Assembly: GCA_002269645.1 (NCBI GenBank)
Contig: NIVC01000128.1
Location: 156,731 to 220,730 of the forward strand
Source: Macrostomum lignano
Taxonomy: Eukaryota
DNA: 64,000 bases
Direction of reading: 5' to 3'
Positions 26,901 through 38,900 of the stretch are shown here, piece after piece. A program made the position numbers and the translations under genes. How positions within the stretch are numbered: the stretch's first letter is position 1; each line of letters begins with the position of its first letter. Under the pieces are notes generated by a model that ran no database searches, was not told where the DNA came from, and worked only from the letters and a program-made list of their open reading frames with translations.

Positions 26901-29900
26901 CTACCTCCTCTGCCTCCTCTACCTCCTCTGCCTCCTCTACCTTCTCTACCTCATCTGCCTCCTTTGCCTCCTCTACCTCCTCTACCTCCTCTGCCTCCTC
27001 TACCTTCTCTACCTCCTCTGCCTCCTTTGCCTCCTCTACCTCCTCTACCTCCTCTACCTCCTCTGCCTCCTCTACCTCCTCTACCTCCTCTGCCTCCTCT
27101 GCCTCCTTTGCCTCCTCTACCTCCTCTACCTCCTCTACCTCCTCTACCTCATCTGCCTCCTCTACCTCCTCTGCCTCCTCTACCTTCTCTACCTCCTCTG
27201 CCTCCTCTGCCTCCTTTGCCTCCTCTACCTCCTCTGCCTCCTCTACCTTCTCTACCTTCTCTACCTCCTCTACCTTCTCTACCTCCTTTGCCTTCTCTAC
27301 CTCCTCTGCCTCCTCTGCCTCCTCTACCTCCTGTGCCTCCTCTGCCTCCTCTACCTCCTCTACCTCCTCTGCCTCCTCTACTTCCTCTGCCTCCTCTACC
27401 ATGCTTTCTCCCTCTCTCCATTCCTATCTCTGTTCACTCCCATGTCTCCAAGGCTTCAAGCCATCAACGTGGGCAGCGCAGATATGTAAAATTCGATCCC
27501 AACAAATCGATGAGGCAGCTCAGCAGCCACCGTTTTGGGTCAGCCTTGACTATGCACTGCATAGCTACGTCATTTTTGCTGTCTCAAGCTGGAGCATTTC
27601 TATAGCTATTGCCTGTTCTTAGTTATCGAGTAGCTCATCTTTGACAGTCTGCTTCGGGGCCTTTCGTGGGCTATCCTGGACTTCGGTAACTGCCTCCAAC
27701 ATTGATGCTTTTAAGTGCTTATTTGCGAATAGAAGCATCACGCTATACCCTTGAAATTGATTGAAGTTACCCATAAATATATACAGATGTCAGTGACCCC
27801 AGTGACCTCAGTCTACCTGCAGATATATACAGATGTCAGTGACCCCAGTGACCTCAGTCTACCTGCAGATATATACAGATGTCAGTGACCCCAGTGACCT
27901 CAGTCTACCTGCAGATATATACAGATGTCAGTGACCCTAGTGACCTCAGTCTACCTGCAGATATATACAGATGTCAGTGACCTCAGTGACCTCTAAAAAC
28001 TGAAAAAGGTCACTAAAATCGACTCACCAAGTGGAGCGTCTTCGCACCTTATTCAGTCATGCAGTTTTTGCTTAGCAACGAAGCCCCCACCCCACCCAGA
28101 GCACAGAATTGGAATCATTAGTGGAAACTCGAAACTCAGTACTCGAGACTCTGCTTCTCCACTGGCTGCCCTCCCACCGCTCTCCCACTGGCCAAGGTGG
28201 CATTGGCGAAGTCAGGGTGGGAAATCAGTGGCTACATTGGCCCAGTTATTCTGAAGTCGAGCGGCAGTTTGAGTCGAGTTCACCCGGGGCGACGCCAAAA
28301 TATTTCGGCACGAACTCCTCAATCCCGCCCCAGCCCCCGTGACCGCGAGCGGTGCCCTCCGAAGCACCGCTGCTCCCGTGTCTTCTTTCGCTAACTTTTC
28401 CCAGCTCCCATCGTATCCCTTTCCGCCCGTTATGCATTCAACCTACCCGCTTGTCTGTCTGTCTGTCTGTCTGTCTGTCTGTCTGTCTGTCTGTCTGTCT
28501 GTGTTAGTGTATGTGTGTTTGCGTAGACTCTCCGTCGGTTTAAAAGCCTCGTTAGCGGGACCTTTCGATTACATGGACCCTTTAAGTGGACCACTTTAAA
28601 TTTCCTCGATGGGAAGTACAGAGAGGGTTTATCTTGACTGACTGCATAGTCTGAAAGGCAGCCATTACTGTGGCCAAAGTCCCTCTACTTAAAATAGTTT
28701 AGATTTTAAGTATTGAGTATTTTAGTTTACAAGGACCTTTAACACAGTCCACCCAAACCACATCGCTGAGGTCCACCTAACCCGAAAACAGACAAATTTC
28801 ACACATACATAGTGTATGTTTTGTTTGTATGAAAACTTATTTTTTTATGATATAGCTCTTTAAAATGCGTGTTTAAGCACATTGTGGCATTTTTGAGTTG
28901 CAGAAGCAAGCTTACTAAACAGGCCGAAGTGATTGGAATGTAAAATAGCTCGTAAAATTGAAGTTTCTGCTACAAACGAAGCTCCGATGTAGCCCATAAT
29001 GACTAAAAATTCACGAGATGGTTTTATTTATTACTTGTGGTTTCTGAAACAAAACTGTTCACTAATAGTCCTGTCGCTATCATACTTGGAATAAATGCTT
29101 CATCAAGTGTTGATTTTAGAGAACCTAGATTGAAGGCTATGCATGACTACATAATTTCTCATGCTGCATTTGCAGCATTGCTTAATTTAAGGAGACATAA
29201 AGACAAGAGCCTTGCTTACAGCACGGACTCCTAAAATAGTTTGTGTGCTTTATACTCAAACGTTTACAGCTTCGGCAACCGATAGGATAGGGCTGGATAA
29301 TGAAACTTTAAAAGCCGAACCATCCTGACTGAGGTCCAAGCAAACCCCAAAGCTCATCAGCCAATCCTGTGCTTAAACGGACAGTCAAGAATGGGGTGGT
29401 TTAACTTTCATTCCTTACTGTCCGTCCGTTTGAACGTTGGTCATTTCCCTCTCTCCCTCCGAAGGGCTCTTATTGGTCTGTAGCTGGCTTAATCATCAAG
29501 GTCGAGGGTCTGAAATAGAGGGTCAACGTAAACATCTTTCTAATCACAAAAACAGACACCAATTCCCAACCTCAAACAAGACTTTAACTTGAATTAGTTG
29601 GCCTCACAAGTTGGTTCTGCCAACTGGTTGTCCTTAACACGCCAGCATGCAGAAAAAAAAAGCCCCAAGCTAGTAGGCGTTTCTACGTTGAAAGGATTAT
29701 CAAGTGCACGAAAAAGAAGCTCTACATAAAGTGGAAAGGATATTCAAGGTGAGTTTCAAAAGACTTATTCACCACTGCACTCTATTTATTATATATACTA
29801 AGAGTTGTTTCCATACGGCCATATCGGTTCGGCTAATAAACAGTGCTTTCATATTTTAGCAATCAAAATTCTTGGGAGCCACGAAGCAACATACCAACAA

Positions 29901-35900: not shown

Positions 35901-38900
35901 GTGATTTCGATGACGAAGTAGAGTTTGAGAAGGTGATGAATTCCTGTGTGGAAGAAAGTGCTGCCTTTGGCAATCTAGATGATGTGCCTGAATTCGACTT
36001 TGGTGACGTCGAGCTCGAGGAGTTGTCGTCGGATCTACATCCAGCTCTTCAAATGATTGCTGACGAAAATGAAAAATTGGAGTCGAATGCACAGAAAAAG
36101 ATGAAGGGCCGATCATTTGAGAATAAGCGTCATAATTGCGTTTTCTGTAATGAGCTGTTTTCTAAAATACGCCGGCATATTATTCGTTGTCATAGTGATC
36201 AACTGGACGTGCAGCGTCCAGTATGATTTAAACTGTCAGATCGGTTGATTCTTTTTGTTGTGATCGTAAAGATTTATATTTAATTGGCTGCCTTTTTTAA
36301 TTTCTCTGTTAGGTTACAATCGGGAGATGGACAGACTGCGACTTCTAGGCGATTTTTATCACAATATTGCTGTACTGAAGGATGAAAAGGACGGTAAAAT
36401 TATTGTCTGTCGGGAGAAAAGCGTGACCATGGAGTCTACGGAAGTACACACCTATCTTCCTTGTGTTCACTGCTTTGGATTTTTTACGGACGTGAAATAA
36501 GTCGCCACTGAGACCGCTGCAAATTTAGATCTAACTGTTAAAACTGTTAAAAATCTTCGTTGCTCTAGATTTTTATATTGGTCCACAGTATATTGGTCCA
36601 CGTACACCATCATGTTCTAAAGGTCCGTTTAAACCTGGTCTACCTAACAACATAGTTCGAATAGTTTAATTTACTCGAATTGAAGACCTTTTGAAATTAA
36701 AAAGGCAACAGTATTTTCCAAGCGTCTCAAATTAAGCTGGTTCCCCGATTTTCTAATCATAACTAATTGGTCCACCTAACGCATTGTCAGAACAACGGTC
36801 TATGTAACCACACATACACTAGTATGTCTGTCTGTCTGTCTGTCTGTCTGTCTGTCTGTCTGTCTGTCTGTCTGTCTGTCTGTCTGTCTGTCTGTCTGTC
36901 TGTCTGTCTGTCTGTCTGTCTGTCTGTCTGTCTTAGTGTCTGTCTGTCTGTCTGTCTTAGTGTCTGTCTGTCTGTCTGTCTTAGTGTCTGTCTGTCTGTC
37001 TGTCTGTCTGTCTGTCTGTCTGTCTGTCTGTCTGTCTGTCTGTCTGTCTGTCTGTCTGTCTGTCTGTCTGTCTGTCTGTCTGTCTGTCTGTCCGTCTGTC
37101 TGTCTGTCTGTCTGTCTGTCTGTCTGTCTGTCTGTCTGTCGTAGTGTCTGTCTGTCTGTCTGTCTGTCTGTCTGTCTGTCTGTCTGTCTGTCTGTCTGTC
37201 TGTCTGTCTCTGCTTCTATATCTTTTTTTCTCTCTGTCAAGATATTTCACGAGTAAAGGGAATTAAACTACTAGTAGTTGTATTAACATTTTATTTCAGC
37301 AGATGTTAATGACTAGGTATTAGCAAATGATAAGCTCACAAAGGCTCTGACCTGTGTATTGTGTGCAATGCAAAGAGTATTTTACCGCGTCAACCAGGCC
37401 GCCAACTGGCTTTTCTCAGCGTGGTCTCAAGTCTTCTTGGGCTGCGGCTCCAGTCTTCTAGTCTTGAATTATGCATTGTCAACTCCAGCTCTGCTGGGGG
37501 GGGGGGTTAAGACTGCTTCTTAATTCCCTTGTTCTTGCTGTTGTTCTACTTCTTCTAGAAGAGGTGCAACAGTAGACATGGCGCCCGCCAGAACAGAATG
37601 GGGCAGCAGCAGATCGGCTGAAAGAGGAGTTTGGGGAAAAGGCGGCCGCAGAGTCTTGGTGGCCCCAGGTTTTTAATGCTCTCATTAGCATTCTGTTTGC
37701 TGAAGCAGCTGCCACGCGACCACGGCAAAGGAGAAAAGATGAGAGAGATGAAGAGTAGAGGAAGCTTTGCTTTGCAGTTTGGTTGGTGAAGCTGGGTTCC
37801 AGGCAGTTTGGGCTTCCCAACTCACCAATTTTTCCTGCAACATATCTGAAAAGAGTTTTGCTTCCCCATAATTAAAGATTTGCCCTGTTGGATTTGCAGG
37901 TAATCTGGCAGAAGGACAAGAAGACCCTCACCTTCAACAAGCAGTTTGTGGACGACAGCAGGCTCAAAATAGTTTCCACCGGTATAAAGGCGAGTAACCG
38001 GTTCGACTTGCAGATTTCAGAGATCAGAGCTTCGGACGAGGGACTCTACAGATGCATTGCCAGCTTTGGCAACAAGTTCTTTGTTAAAAATGTCACACTG
38101 CTCGTCACTGGTAAGACTGCTTTAGTGCGCGTCGCAGAGGTCGGAATTGGATTTTATCGACACGCAACCTACGCCCACCTCACTCGACTACACCAAACTC
38201 ACCTCTACACCCATCTCATTCCCCTACACCAACCTCACGCCCCTACACCCACCTTATTCCCCTACACTCACCTCATTCCTCATGCGTTCACCTCACTCCC
38301 CTACACCAACCTCACCCCTACACCCACCTCACTCCCCATGCACCCAACTCACTCCCCATGCACCCACCTCACTCCCATACACCCACCTCACTCACATACA
38401 CCCACCTCACTCCCCAACACCCACCTCACTCCCCATACGCCCATCTCAATCCCCATACACCCACCTCACTCCACCAGATACCCAACCATCACTCACAAGC
38501 ACCTCACTGCCCCCAAGCACTCCACTGAGTTTGAGCATACAAGTCGCGCATACACTTCGTCAGCCACAACCAAAAGCAAATTTATAAAAAAAACTGAAGC
38601 CGAACTAACCAACTCATCTTGTTAAATAGCATCAAAGATTATTTTGTTTTGCATTAAAGCAACTAATTATTAAAATTCGATAGTTCAGCAAAGCGCAGTC
38701 CAGAATTAAAAGTAGCGAATGTGCAACTGAGAGAAGAGAAGTGAGAGAGTGAGAGAACTGGTAACCGGACCTCCTAGCACTGCTGTCCTCATTAGGGGCG
38801 CATTTATCCTTCTGGTCGGAGACTTGGCTCACTATTTCACACTCTGTCCATCTCTCTCTGTCCCTGGGAGCCTATTCTTTGCCTGTTGAAGCAGAGGTAT

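What the first reader, a model, noticed from the sequence alone, without database searches (positions are those of the whole stretch)
28505..36821. Microsatellite-embedded TIR element carrying a spliced chromodomain gene: candidate undescribed chromatin-reading DNA transposon family
Seen: 24-bp imperfect TIRs (21/24) starting TAG and ending CTA, subterminal GTGGACCA/TGGTCCAC repeats and (TCTG)n directly against both ends. The interior holds a chromodomain, a CxxC..H..H finger and a G(D/N)FxHNxxVL..G..I..YLPCxxCxGFF..RH block. From memory, that block resembles the N-terminal region of large animal proteins that end in a tyrosine recombinase (Crypton-like); this is unverified. Here the gene stops before any catalytic domain. 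The TIR also contains the TAGAC/GTCTATG motif found in the inverted repeats of the two YR elements in this window. Inference: a non-autonomous, possibly (TCTG)n-targeting element whose protein reads methylated histones. An Academ-like DDE element (TAG..CTA ends, GTGT/GTAT 4-bp TSD) or a TA-TSD element are alternatives.
Basis: partly seen in the sequence, partly recalled or inferred. Interest (0 to 1): 0.8.

Follow-up and report, generated by a model that had tools for sequence, protein, structure and literature searches.

The report
Microsatellite-targeting tyrosine-recombinase transposon, deleted copy
This is a broken, internally deleted copy of a young flatworm (Macrostomum lignano) DNA transposon whose intact copies encode one protein joining an HP1-like chromodomain, zinc fingers and a tyrosine recombinase, and every copy I could retrieve sits in the same orientation inside a (GTCT)n microsatellite.

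Summary
The 24-nt inverted termini (21/24, outer 13 perfect), the oriented subterminal GGACC repeats and (GTCT)n on both sides are all present. So is a spliced chromodomain / zinc-finger gene.

Three more copies were retrieved from the Macrostomum lignano assembly. All have base-identical junctions, (gtct)n-gtgt|TAGTG...CACTA|gtat-(gtct)n, in the same orientation. Their flanks beyond the microsatellites are unrelated. It is therefore a mobile element with strict (GTCT)n target preference.

The full-length copies (8.8-38 kb) encode a single 1184-aa protein, and nothing else. It has:
- an HP1-class chromodomain
- two zinc modules
- a C-terminal tyrosine-recombinase domain (RxxE, GKRGRKVP, LRKYxAT and LGH-9-Y motifs; Foldseek top hits Xer/IntI; Pfam Phage_integrase in 3 of 18 relatives)
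- a possible Myb/SANT-like tail (motif only)

The window copy lacks 2.7 kb including the recombinase, and also carries two frameshifts, a stop codon and a 232-bp deletion. It is non-autonomous.

The best reading is a Crypton-class element. The closest known kind is CryptonV, the microsatellite-specific Cryptons, but I could not test membership. The DDE, TA-TSD and 4-bp-TSD alternatives are disfavoured. I score it a new variant of a known kind, of moderate interest.

The parts
28452..28504 (+). Left flanking (GTCT)n target microsatellite, ending in the invariant GTGT (28501-28504) that abuts the element.
   Evidence: TRF; sequence. The same gtct..gtgt| junction is present in all 4 copies.
28505..28528 (+). 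Left terminal inverted repeat TAGTGTATGTGTGTTTGCGTAGAC. The outer 13 nt are perfectly inverted at the right end.
28558..28775 (+). Left subterminal region with four same-orientation GGACC(W)(W)T motifs (28558, 28575, 28588, 28733) and one inverted copy (28770). Candidate accessory binding sites for the element's protein.
28789..28830 (+). Internal site that looks like a right end joined to a left end (CACACATACA-TAG-TGTATGTTTTGTTTG). It is preceded by GGTCCACCTAAC, the same 12-mer that precedes the true right end. It is conserved in the other copy aligned across it (L001). Its meaning is unexplained.
   Evidence: (I16).
29647..29748 (+). Exon 1: ATG and the first half of the chromodomain. The A-run at 29653-29661 has 9 A where the intact copy has 8, giving a +1 frameshift directly after Met-Gln.
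29860..29930 (+). Exon 2: second half of the chromodomain ([24 protein letters not shown]).
30052..30092 (+). Exon 3 ([14 protein letters not shown]).
30194..35406 (+). Internal hypervariable macro-repeat: arrays of an 83-85-bp unit (TGGGGTCCAGCTAAACCC...) interleaved with copies of exon 4. Copy number differs greatly between elements (2 exon-4 copies here and in L001, 9 in L003, about 25 in L002).
31314..31700 (+). Exon 4, copy 1 (129 codons, low-complexity acidic/serine-rich linker, ends at a GTGAGC donor).
32968..33354 (+). Exon 4, copy 2.
35453..36215 (+). Exon 5: linker plus the first zinc module (C..C..H..H: [21 protein letters not shown]). Its 3' end, the splice donor and most of the following intron are removed by a 232-bp deletion at about 36215-36220.
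36313..36536 (+). Remnant of the last exon: [26 protein letters not shown] block (second zinc module, C..C..H..C). It has T6 instead of T7 (a -1 frameshift near 36480) and TGG>TGA near 36510.
36537..36545 (+). Junction of a 2.7-kb internal deletion (equivalent to L001 14651-17382). It removes about 645 codons (core-binding and catalytic recombinase domains, C-terminal tail) and the 3' UTR.
36546..36797 (-). Right subterminal region with four GGACC motifs (36579-36586, 36594-36601, about 36622, 36768-36775) in the orientation mirroring the left end.
36798..36821 (-). Right terminal inverted repeat (GTCTATGTAACCACACATACACTA on the + strand).
36822..37209 (+). Invariant GTAT followed by the right flanking (GTCT)n microsatellite (about 96 units), with four odd 'GTCT-TAGT-GTCT'-type variant units.

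Best explanation
Window 28505-36821 is a non-autonomous, internally deleted copy of a young family of tyrosine-recombinase (Crypton-class) DNA transposons of the flatworm Macrostomum lignano.

Shown:
- The family has at least four copies with base-identical ends and unrelated flanks.
- Every copy lies in the same orientation inside a (GTCT)n array, with the junctions (GTCT)n-GTGT|TAGTG...CACTA|GTAT-(GTCT)n.
- Intact copies encode only one protein, of 1184 aa.
- That protein combines an N-terminal HP1-like chromodomain, a repeat-prone acidic linker, two zinc modules, a core-binding-like helical domain and a catalytic domain carrying the tyrosine-recombinase signature. A C-terminal tail with a Myb/SANT-like W..W motif is read from the alignment only and was not tested.
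- The window copy has lost the recombinase part and carries further frameshifts and a stop codon, but keeps both ends almost unchanged.

Inferred mechanism:
- The recombinase excises or copies the element as a circle.
- In the circle, the two 11-13-nt inverted terminal arms face each other across a short GTAT/GTGT-type spacer. This forms a lox/FRT-like core site.
[quoted passage not shown] This explains the orientation specificity and the absence of a recognisable target-site duplication.
- The subterminal GGACC repeats would be accessory binding sites for the zinc or Myb-like modules.
- The chromodomain would add a bias towards H3K9me- or H3K27me-marked chromatin.
- The window copy could move only if an intact copy supplies the protein in trans.
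For: Mobile element and target preference:
- The termini are confirmed and non-random.
- The full-length paralogue P0002 (PAA76011.1, M. lignano) is 95% identical over the window's zinc-finger block.
- Loci L001-L003 have ends identical over at least 38 nt, the same gtgt|...|gtat junctions and the same orientation.
- No flank homology exists beyond the microsatellites. Microsatellite lengths differ between loci.
- Away from the elements, (GTCT)n of 4 or more units covers only 236 bp of about 102 kb. Four out of four by chance is therefore very unlikely.

Single protein, recently active:
- No other ORF of 90 aa or more with coding character exists in the 8.8-kb element.
- The last 720-aa exon is 99.7-100% identical among three copies.

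Tyrosine-recombinase assignment:
- Invariant or near-invariant R(790)xxE, K839 in GKRGRKVP, R911 in LRKYxAT, H937 and Y946 in LGHxxxVHxxFY, with the His-to-Tyr spacing of 9 seen in XerD, lambda Int and Cre (motif knowledge is mine).
- AlphaFold models have pLDDT 81 and 84. Their best PDB matches are XerA 5hxy (probability 0.99 and 0.95), archaeal Xer 4a8e and integron integrase 2a3v.
- Pfam Phage_integrase is the top family, hit by 3 of 18 relatives, best E 2.8e-6.

Chromodomain:
- Pfam Chromo 29.2 bits.
- The nearest solved structures are HP1, CBX and SUV39H1, with the F/W/Y cage positions conserved.

Window-copy defects.

Literature:
- Crypton insertion model and active Cryptons (PMC9977147).
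- Microsatellite-specific CryptonV (cited in PMC8869645).
Against: - No empty site, circle junction or excision product was seen. The crossover position and the circular intermediate are therefore inferred.
- Fold matches to recombinases are consistent but weak (E about 0.02, TM 0.3-0.4). Pfam does not call the domain on P0002 itself. The first His of the R-H-R-H-Y set is a Thr in this family.
- A 24-nt TIR with subterminal repeats is the classic look of DDE transposons. Animal Cryptons were reported to lack any terminal repeats (PMC3212892, section 8).
- The internal end-to-end site shares a TA between the two end-like halves. This also fits abutting TA-flanked elements.
- Only four copies were examined, all from one assembly of a polyploid genome.
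- Chromodomain binding specificity is untested.
Confidence: 0.75

Rival explanations
1. A DDE (cut-and-paste) TIR transposon, either with a TA or 4/8-bp target duplication hidden in the microsatellite, or an Academ-like element. It would be mobilised in trans by a transposase encoded elsewhere, and the chromodomain-recombinase gene would be a captured passenger.
For: - A 24-nt TIR and oriented subterminal repeats are typical of DDE elements.
- TA flanks the GTGTATG...CATACAC core at both ends and at the internal end-to-end site.
- A 4- or 8-bp duplication of GTCT units would be invisible.
Against: - The bases outside TAG/CTA (GTGT on the left, GTAT on the right) are the same non-identical pair in four independent insertions. 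They are therefore not a TSD.
- Pure (GTCT)n has no TA.
- If the element is extended outwards to the array, its tips (GTGT versus ATAC) do not match.
- Strict orientation relative to an asymmetric repeat (4 of 4) is unusual for DDE insertion.
- The only gene in three near-identical full-length copies is an intact recombinase, 99.7-100% identical. No DDE domain was seen in the element.
Confidence: 0.12
2. A DIRS-like tyrosine-recombinase retroelement (inverted terminal repeats plus an internal complementary region) that has lost its reverse transcriptase.
For: Inverted termini, together with an internal site that juxtaposes right-end-like and left-end-like sequence (28789-28830), recall the DIRS ITR/ICR layout (my knowledge of Poulter & Goodwin 2005).
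Against: - Three full-length copies have no RT, RNase H or methyltransferase ORF.
- None of the 23 relatives scanned shows an RT domain.
- The gene has introns, which is unexpected for an element copied through spliced RNA.
Confidence: 0.04
3. An ordinary multi-copy host gene sitting in segmental or homeologous duplications of a polyploid genome, with the terminal repeat a by-product of degenerate microsatellite.
For: - M. lignano carries recent genome duplication (my knowledge). The copies are annotated as one gene cluster, Mlig016835 g2-g4.
- The left arm is in 4-nt register with the (GTNT)n array.
Against: - Homology stops exactly at the microsatellites on both sides in all pairwise comparisons. 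The flanks share nothing, while the element is 97-100% identical.
- The right arm is the reverse complement of the left, which slippage cannot generate.
- The host contexts differ: an intron of an Ank/ARM gene in L001, other genes elsewhere.
Confidence: 0.03

Closest known systems
[quoted passage not shown]
   Same: A DNA transposon that encodes a tyrosine recombinase and no reverse transcriptase, in an animal host, with specific insertion into microsatellites.
   Different: - Membership could not be tested, because no CryptonV sequence is available here.
- The host is a flatworm.
- It carries an N-terminal chromodomain, 24-nt TIRs with subterminal repeats, a (GTCT)n target and an internal exon-containing macro-repeat. 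None of these is known to me to be a CryptonV feature.
Crypton superfamily in general (Goodwin 2003; Kojima & Jurka 2011, PMC3212892; active CryptonF-1_cRei, PMC9977147)
   Same: - It has a single recombinase gene and no recognisable TSD.
- A short sequence at one terminus (GTAT) is nearly identical to the sequence left at the other junction (GTGT) and to the target unit (GTCT). This matches CACCG/CAYCG in CryptonF-1_cRei.
- Non-autonomous deletion derivatives exist.
   Different: - Animal Cryptons (A and I groups) were reported to have no terminal repeats of any kind, and fungal ones only 4-6-bp direct repeats. This element has 24-nt inverted repeats.
- The catalytic domain is not picked up as DUF3504 (the CryptonA-derived domain) in Pfam scans.
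- The N-terminal zinc modules and the chromodomain are extra.
Kirc / 'Captain' recombinases of fungal Enterprise/Starship elements (PMC8092012, PMC10104507)
   Same: A transposon tyrosine recombinase combined with a Zn-finger and a chromodomain in one protein.
   Different: - The domain order is reversed: in Kirc the recombinase is N-terminal and the chromodomain C-terminal.
- Kirc belongs to the DUF3435 family, in fungi, on giant cargo-carrying elements.
- Only the M. lignano member among the 23 relatives aligned here has the chromodomain. The fusion is therefore independent.
Chromoviruses (Ty3/Gypsy integrases with a C-terminal chromodomain; my knowledge, Kordis 2005 and Gao 2008)
   Same: A mobile-element integration enzyme fused to an HP1-like chromodomain, thought to steer insertion to marked chromatin.
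   Different: It is a different enzyme class (DDE integrase versus tyrosine recombinase), a retroelement rather than a DNA element, and has no microsatellite specificity.
loxP/Cre, FRT/Flp and dif/XerCD core sites
   Same: Two 11-13-bp inverted arms around a short asymmetric spacer. This is what the joined ends of this element would form, and orientation is set by the spacer.
   Different: The joined-end site is hypothetical here. The target is a repeat array rather than a second copy of the same site.

Membership tests
Crypton-class DNA transposon (tyrosine-recombinase DNA transposon) | Encodes a tyrosine recombinase with the catalytic R..K..(H)xxR..H/W..Y set. | tested here: met
   - Invariant RxxE, GKRGRKVP, LRKYxAT and LGH-9-Y motifs.
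- Foldseek top hits XerA, Xer and IntI.
- Pfam Phage_integrase in 3 of 18 relatives, best E 2.8e-6.
- Caveats: the first His is Thr, and scores are modest. The window copy itself has lost this domain.
Crypton-class DNA transposon (tyrosine-recombinase DNA transposon) | No reverse transcriptase and no LTRs; the recombinase is the only transposition protein. | tested here: met
   ORF survey of the 8.8-kb full-length copy, exon map and Pfam scans.
Crypton-class DNA transposon (tyrosine-recombinase DNA transposon) | No TSD; a short terminal sequence matches the target (site-specific recombination). | tested here: inconclusive
   The invariant GTGT|...|GTAT junctions in GTCT arrays fit this model. 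No empty site or circle junction was available.
Crypton-class DNA transposon (tyrosine-recombinase DNA transposon) | Absence of terminal inverted repeats, as described for known Cryptons. | tested here: not met
   There are 24-nt TIRs, 13 nt perfect, in all four copies. This is a descriptive trait of known members (PMC3212892) rather than a mechanistic requirement.
CryptonV | Recombinase sequence clusters with the Repbase CryptonV consensus proteins. | not testable with these tools
Only the citation in PMC8869645 was found.
CryptonV | Specific insertion in microsatellites. | tested here: met
   4 of 4 copies lie in (GTCT)n in the same orientation, against a background of about 0.2%.
CryptonA / DUF3504 lineage | Catalytic domain recognisable as DUF3504/CryptonA-type. 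| tested here: not met
   There is no DUF3504 hit in Pfam scans of 23 full proteins at E<=0.01, nor of 18 catalytic domains at E<=10.
DDE TIR transposons (Academ, Tc1/mariner and other TA-TSD elements) | Target-site duplication created at each insertion (4 bp for the Academ-like reading, TA for Tc1/mariner). | tested here: not met
   The flanking bases are an invariant non-identical pair (GTGT/GTAT) in four independent copies. The bases outside TA are also invariant, and (GTCT)n lacks TA.
DDE TIR transposons (Academ, Tc1/mariner and other TA-TSD elements) | Encodes, or has autonomous partners that encode, a DDE transposase. | tested here: not met
   Full-length copies encode only the recombinase protein. 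A trans-acting DDE elsewhere in the genome cannot be excluded.
DIRS-like recombinase retrotransposons | RT/RNase H ORF together with the recombinase; ITRs plus an internal complementary region. | tested here: not met
   There is no RT. An ICR-like internal junction exists at 28789-28830 but is unexplained.
HP1/Polycomb-class chromodomain | Chromo fold with three aromatic cage residues. | tested here: met
   - Pfam Chromo 29.2 bits against a cut-off of 25.1.
- The best PDB relatives are HP1 (E 1.2e-6), CBX and SUV39H1, with F12, W29 and Y32 aligned to the cage.
- Binding itself was not tested.

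The most novel reading that the evidence does not exclude
This would be an active, self-contained site-specific integration system in a laboratory animal. 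A previously unnamed, metazoan-wide zinc-finger tyrosine-recombinase clade (765 clusters, distinct from DUF3504/CryptonA) has a M. lignano branch that evolved three things. First, lox-like 11-13-bp inverted arms. Second, strict orientation-specific recombination into (GTCT)n. Third, an independently acquired HP1-type chromodomain. Insertion would then be steered both by DNA sequence and by histone methylation.
Probability: 0.3. Interest if true: 0.75.

Novelty: new variant of a known kind. Interest (0 to 1): 0.58.

Why it matters
- Tyrosine-recombinase DNA transposons of animals are poorly understood. Their ends are usually undefinable, and activity has so far been observed only in a green alga (PMC9977147).
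- This family has sharply defined ends, near-identical intact copies and a simple, abundant, orientation-specific target.
- The host, M. lignano, can be cultured and made transgenic. Circle formation, crossover position and the role of the chromodomain are therefore directly testable.
- If active, the recombinase plus its ends could serve as a safe-harbour integration tool aimed at a microsatellite.
- It would also be a second, independent example (after fungal Kirc) of a recombinase recruiting a chromatin reader.
- For genome annotation, the 'Chromo domain-containing protein' and 'C2H2-type domain-containing protein' entries of M. lignano (Mlig016835 g2-g4 and relatives) are transposon genes. 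Hundreds of 'uncharacterized' proteins of fish, molluscs, echinoderms and insects belong to the same recombinase clade.

Tried and rejected
- The search for homologous proteins with the 320-aa window translation found nothing. Three further queries failed with database time-outs. The last allowed search, with the chromodomain, returned one M. lignano fragment only.
- A sequence-profile search of PDB with the whole family or with the catalytic domain gave no recombinase hit.
- hhalign against single sequences (Cre from memory; the window's other recombinase ORF) was uninformative, with probability below 1%.
- P0011 and P0006 are not on record for contig retrieval.
- Element boundaries could not be defined in other species. 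The anchovy locus L004 and metagenome contig L005 are single copies without obvious terminal structure. Contigs L006-L008 proved to be the same locus from three samples.
- Excision footprints: the 'GTCT-TAGT-GTCT' variant units do not equal any simple left-flank plus right-flank join that I could construct, so this idea was dropped.

Full report
**1. The observation**

The window is eukaryotic and extremely rich in mini- and microsatellites (62 TRF rows). At the stated coordinates:

- The longest inverted repeat of the region is 28505-28528 / 36798-36821, 24 nt and 21/24 complementary.
- Its outer 13-mer TAGTGTATGTGTG occurs nowhere else in the 64 kb (0.07 expected).
- (TGTC)n arrays abut both ends, at 28452-28502 and 36825-37209. 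They are separated from the termini by GTGT and GTAT.
- GTGGACCA occurs five times in the window. Four of these lie within 260 bp of the ends and are mirrored in orientation.
- The GGACC core occurs four times per terminal 330 bp in one orientation, where about 0.3-0.55 are expected.

The interior holds:

- a chromodomain split by an intron (Pfam 25.2 bits against a cut-off of 25.1);
- a 5-kb stretch of 83-85-bp tandem repeats interleaved with duplicated exon copies;
- a CxxC..H..H finger and the GDFYHN...[11 protein letters not shown] block.

The description is therefore correct.

**2. What the gene is**

A HMMER search of 1.84 billion representatives with the 110-aa zinc-finger block gave 765 hits at E<=0.001. 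The best full-length relative, P0002, is 95% identical over that block and 1184 aa long. It starts with exactly the window's chromodomain exons and continues for about 645 residues beyond the point where the window's frame ends.

P0002 is PAA76011.1, 'hypothetical protein BOX15_Mlig016835g4' of Macrostomum lignano. Paralogues g2 and g3 are in the same 90% cluster.

More than 80 of the 150 listed hits share a conserved C-terminal region of about 470 aa. Alignment of 23 of them shows two zinc-binding modules (C429, C432, H442, H447; C515, C518, H530, C534). It also shows the ordered motifs FNxRRxGE, GKRGRKVP, STxLRKYxAT and LGHxxxVHxxFY.

These correspond to the following, by my reading of the known boxes in XerD, lambda Int and Cre:

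- Arg I in an RxxE box
- the beta-hairpin Lys
- Arg II, with Thr where the first His usually sits
- His II
- the nucleophilic Tyr, nine residues after His II

Further evidence:

- Pfam does not call the domain on whole proteins. When the catalytic domains are scanned alone, Phage_integrase is the leading family, hit by 3 of 18 with best E 2.8e-6.
- The AlphaFold models have pLDDT 80.9 for residues 540-985 and 84.0 for 767-971.
- Their best PDB matches are the archaeal recombinase XerA (probability 0.99 and 0.95), then another archaeal Xer and the integron integrase. E-values are only about 0.02 and TM-scores 0.3-0.4.

I take the tyrosine-recombinase assignment as well supported but not proven.

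The chromodomain is closest to HP1, CBX and SUV39H1 chromodomains (E 1.2e-6) and keeps the three cage aromatics. Only the M. lignano protein among the 23 aligned has it. The family occurs in flatworm, sea slugs, many teleosts, a sea cucumber and a mayfly.

**3. It is a transposon with a microsatellite target**

Contig look-ups for P0002, P0152 and P0151 returned three loci of assembly GCA_002269645.1. Each contains the same pair of termini. The elements span L001 8870-17647 (8.8 kb), L002 8873-47284 (38.4 kb) and L003 1770-17655 (15.9 kb).

- In all four copies the 38 nt at each end and the junctions (gtct)n-gtgt|TAGTG...CACTA|gtat-(gtct)n are identical, and the orientation relative to the array is the same.
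- With low-complexity filtering, the 6-kb flanks of the four loci share nothing. Homology between the window and L001 starts and stops in the microsatellites.
- The arrays differ in length from about 40 to more than 380 bp per side.
- Outside these flanks, (GTCT)n of 4 or more units covers 236 bp of about 102 kb. An unoccupied (GTCT)57 lies at window 1591-1820.

Four independent, co-oriented insertions in this repeat cannot be chance.

The size differences between copies come from a macro-repeat made of exon 4 plus 85-bp arrays. There are 2 copies in the window and in L001, 9 in L003 and about 25 in L002.

The 720-codon last exon is 99.7-100% identical in the three full copies. No other ORF of 90 aa or more that looks protein-coding lies in the element; the few others overlap the gene on the opposite strand or lie in repeats. 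The family is therefore young, and its only protein is the recombinase.

**4. State of the window copy**

Relative to L001 the window copy has five lesions:

- A9 instead of A8 just after the ATG, a +1 frameshift at 29653-29661.
- A 232-bp deletion that removes the end of exon 5 with its donor site.
- T6 instead of T7 in the GFFYG codons, a -1 frameshift.
- TGG>TGA.
- A 2.7-kb deletion (L001 14651-17382) that removes everything from residue about 540 onwards.

The left 400 bp are 98% identical to L001 and the right about 265 bp nearly identical. It is therefore a pseudogenised, non-autonomous derivative that could still be a substrate in trans.

**5. Mechanism**

Shown:
- single recombinase gene
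- no usable TSD
- invariant asymmetric junctions
- strict orientation
- a microsatellite target

[quoted passage not shown] This model was proposed by Goodwin and observed for CryptonF-1_cRei, which ends in CACCG and targets CAYCG (PMC9977147). Here the right end finishes in GTAT, the left junction keeps GTGT, and the target unit is GTCT. GTGT variant units are common in the arrays.

If the ends are joined, they give CACACATACAC-TAGTAT(..)TA-GTGTATGTGTG. That is two 11-13-nt inverted arms around a short asymmetric spacer, the layout of lox, FRT and dif sites. The spacer would explain orientation.

The GGACC repeats are candidate accessory sites for the zinc modules or for the tail. The C-terminal W..E..PGK..RxW motif of the alignment looks Myb/SANT-like, which is an inference only. 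The chromodomain plausibly adds a chromatin bias, as in chromoviruses.

**6. Rivals**

- *A DDE element with a hidden TSD.* This is the main alternative, because TIRs with subterminal repeats are classic DDE features and TA flanks the GTGTATG core. Against it: GTGT/GTAT and the bases beyond are the same in four independent copies, so neither a 4-bp nor a TA duplication fits. (GTCT)n also has no TA, and no DDE gene is present.
- *A DIRS-like origin.* This is suggested only by the internal right-end/left-end-like site at 28789-28830. No RT exists.
- *Segmental duplication.* This is excluded by the flank comparison.

**7. Comparison with what is known**

- Kojima and Jurka found no terminal repeats in animal Cryptons (PMC3212892, section 8). 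In that respect this element differs.
- 'CryptonV' was described in Repbase Reports (2012) as target-site-specific Cryptons from cnidarians, some inserting specifically in microsatellites (cited in PMC8869645). This is the closest known kind, but no sequence is available here, so membership is untested.
- A recombinase with a Zn finger and a chromodomain exists in the fungal Enterprise/Starship protein Kirc (PMC8092012). Its domain order and family are different.
- No paper on recombinase elements of M. lignano was found.

I therefore rate this a new variant of a known kind. Its DDE alternatives and its shared-motif link are not supported, and 'undescribed family' is not established.

**8. Unexplained**

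- The conserved internal end-to-end-like site.
- The 'GTCT-TAGT-GTCT' variant units, four in the window's right array and one in L003's left array. They contain the first bases of the element but do not match any simple excision product.
- Why the element carries an expanding array in which a coding exon is part of the repeat unit.

Noticed in passing
window 1591-1820: An unoccupied, almost pure (GTCT)57 array with one GTGT variant unit. It is a potential empty target for the element family, in the same strand orientation as the occupied arrays.
   Followed up: partly
window 2485-4846 (- strand ORFs 2781-4259) and about 46400-47900 (- strand ORFs 46966-47359): Two other, unrelated tyrosine-recombinase elements. 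ORF 2781-3338 hits Pfam Phage_integrase at 30.8 bits. Seven of the ten GTCTATG sites in the window lie in these two regions, and all seven extend to GTCTATGG[CT]C. This recalls the TATGG termini reported for CryptonS (PMC3212892) and may mark their recombination sites.
   Followed up: partly
window 36933-37145; L003 about 1560: Variant units 'GTCT-TAGT-GTCT' (and one GTCG-TAGT) lie inside the flanking microsatellites, at two independent loci. TAGTGT is also the first six bases of the element. Their origin is unexplained: gene conversion from the end, or an abortive recombination.
   Followed up: partly
L002 10959-41381; L003 4357-12329; window 30194-35406: The element's intron arrays and exon 4 form a 0.9-1.7-kb macro-repeat whose copy number ranges from 2 to about 25 between copies. 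L002 even repeats exon 1 (16052). The annotated proteins use one or two exon-4 copies.
   Followed up: partly
window 28612-28638 versus the 85-bp repeat units (e.g. 30283-30298): A left subterminal segment (GAGGGTTTATCTTGAC) is the imperfect reverse complement of the start of every 85-bp internal repeat unit (GTCCAGCTAAACCCTC), which also contains a GGTCC core (I2-I25). It may be a reservoir of binding sites, or simply the origin of the satellite.
   Followed up: no
window 16165-19631 (- strand): ORFs that look like LTR-retrotransposon gag-protease (zinc-knuckle CX2CX4HX4C) and integrase. This is judged by eye and was not scanned.
   Followed up: no
window 37888-38120 (+) and 51679-54980 (-): Likely host exons: an immunoglobulin-like domain just downstream of the element, and a long ORF with an ENaC/ASIC-like look. 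These are read by eye only. The element may sit in or next to a host gene, as in L001, where it lies in an intron of an Ank/ARM gene.
   Followed up: no
proteins P0025, P0156, P0003, P0001 (fish, sea slug): Some relatives are very long proteins with 3-9 tandem copies of the zinc-finger block. In several fishes they carry a conserved-looking gene name (si:ch211-266o15.1), and UniRef labels two isoforms as THAP-type and TRASH domain-containing. They may be domesticated or concatenated copies.
   Followed up: no
protein P0011 (UniRef A0A1I8FQM6): A further M. lignano copy, annotated as a chimeric 598-aa protein. It shares the window's DQLDVQR and FENKRH variants but differs elsewhere, so at least a fifth copy exists. 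No contig is on record for it.
   Followed up: partly
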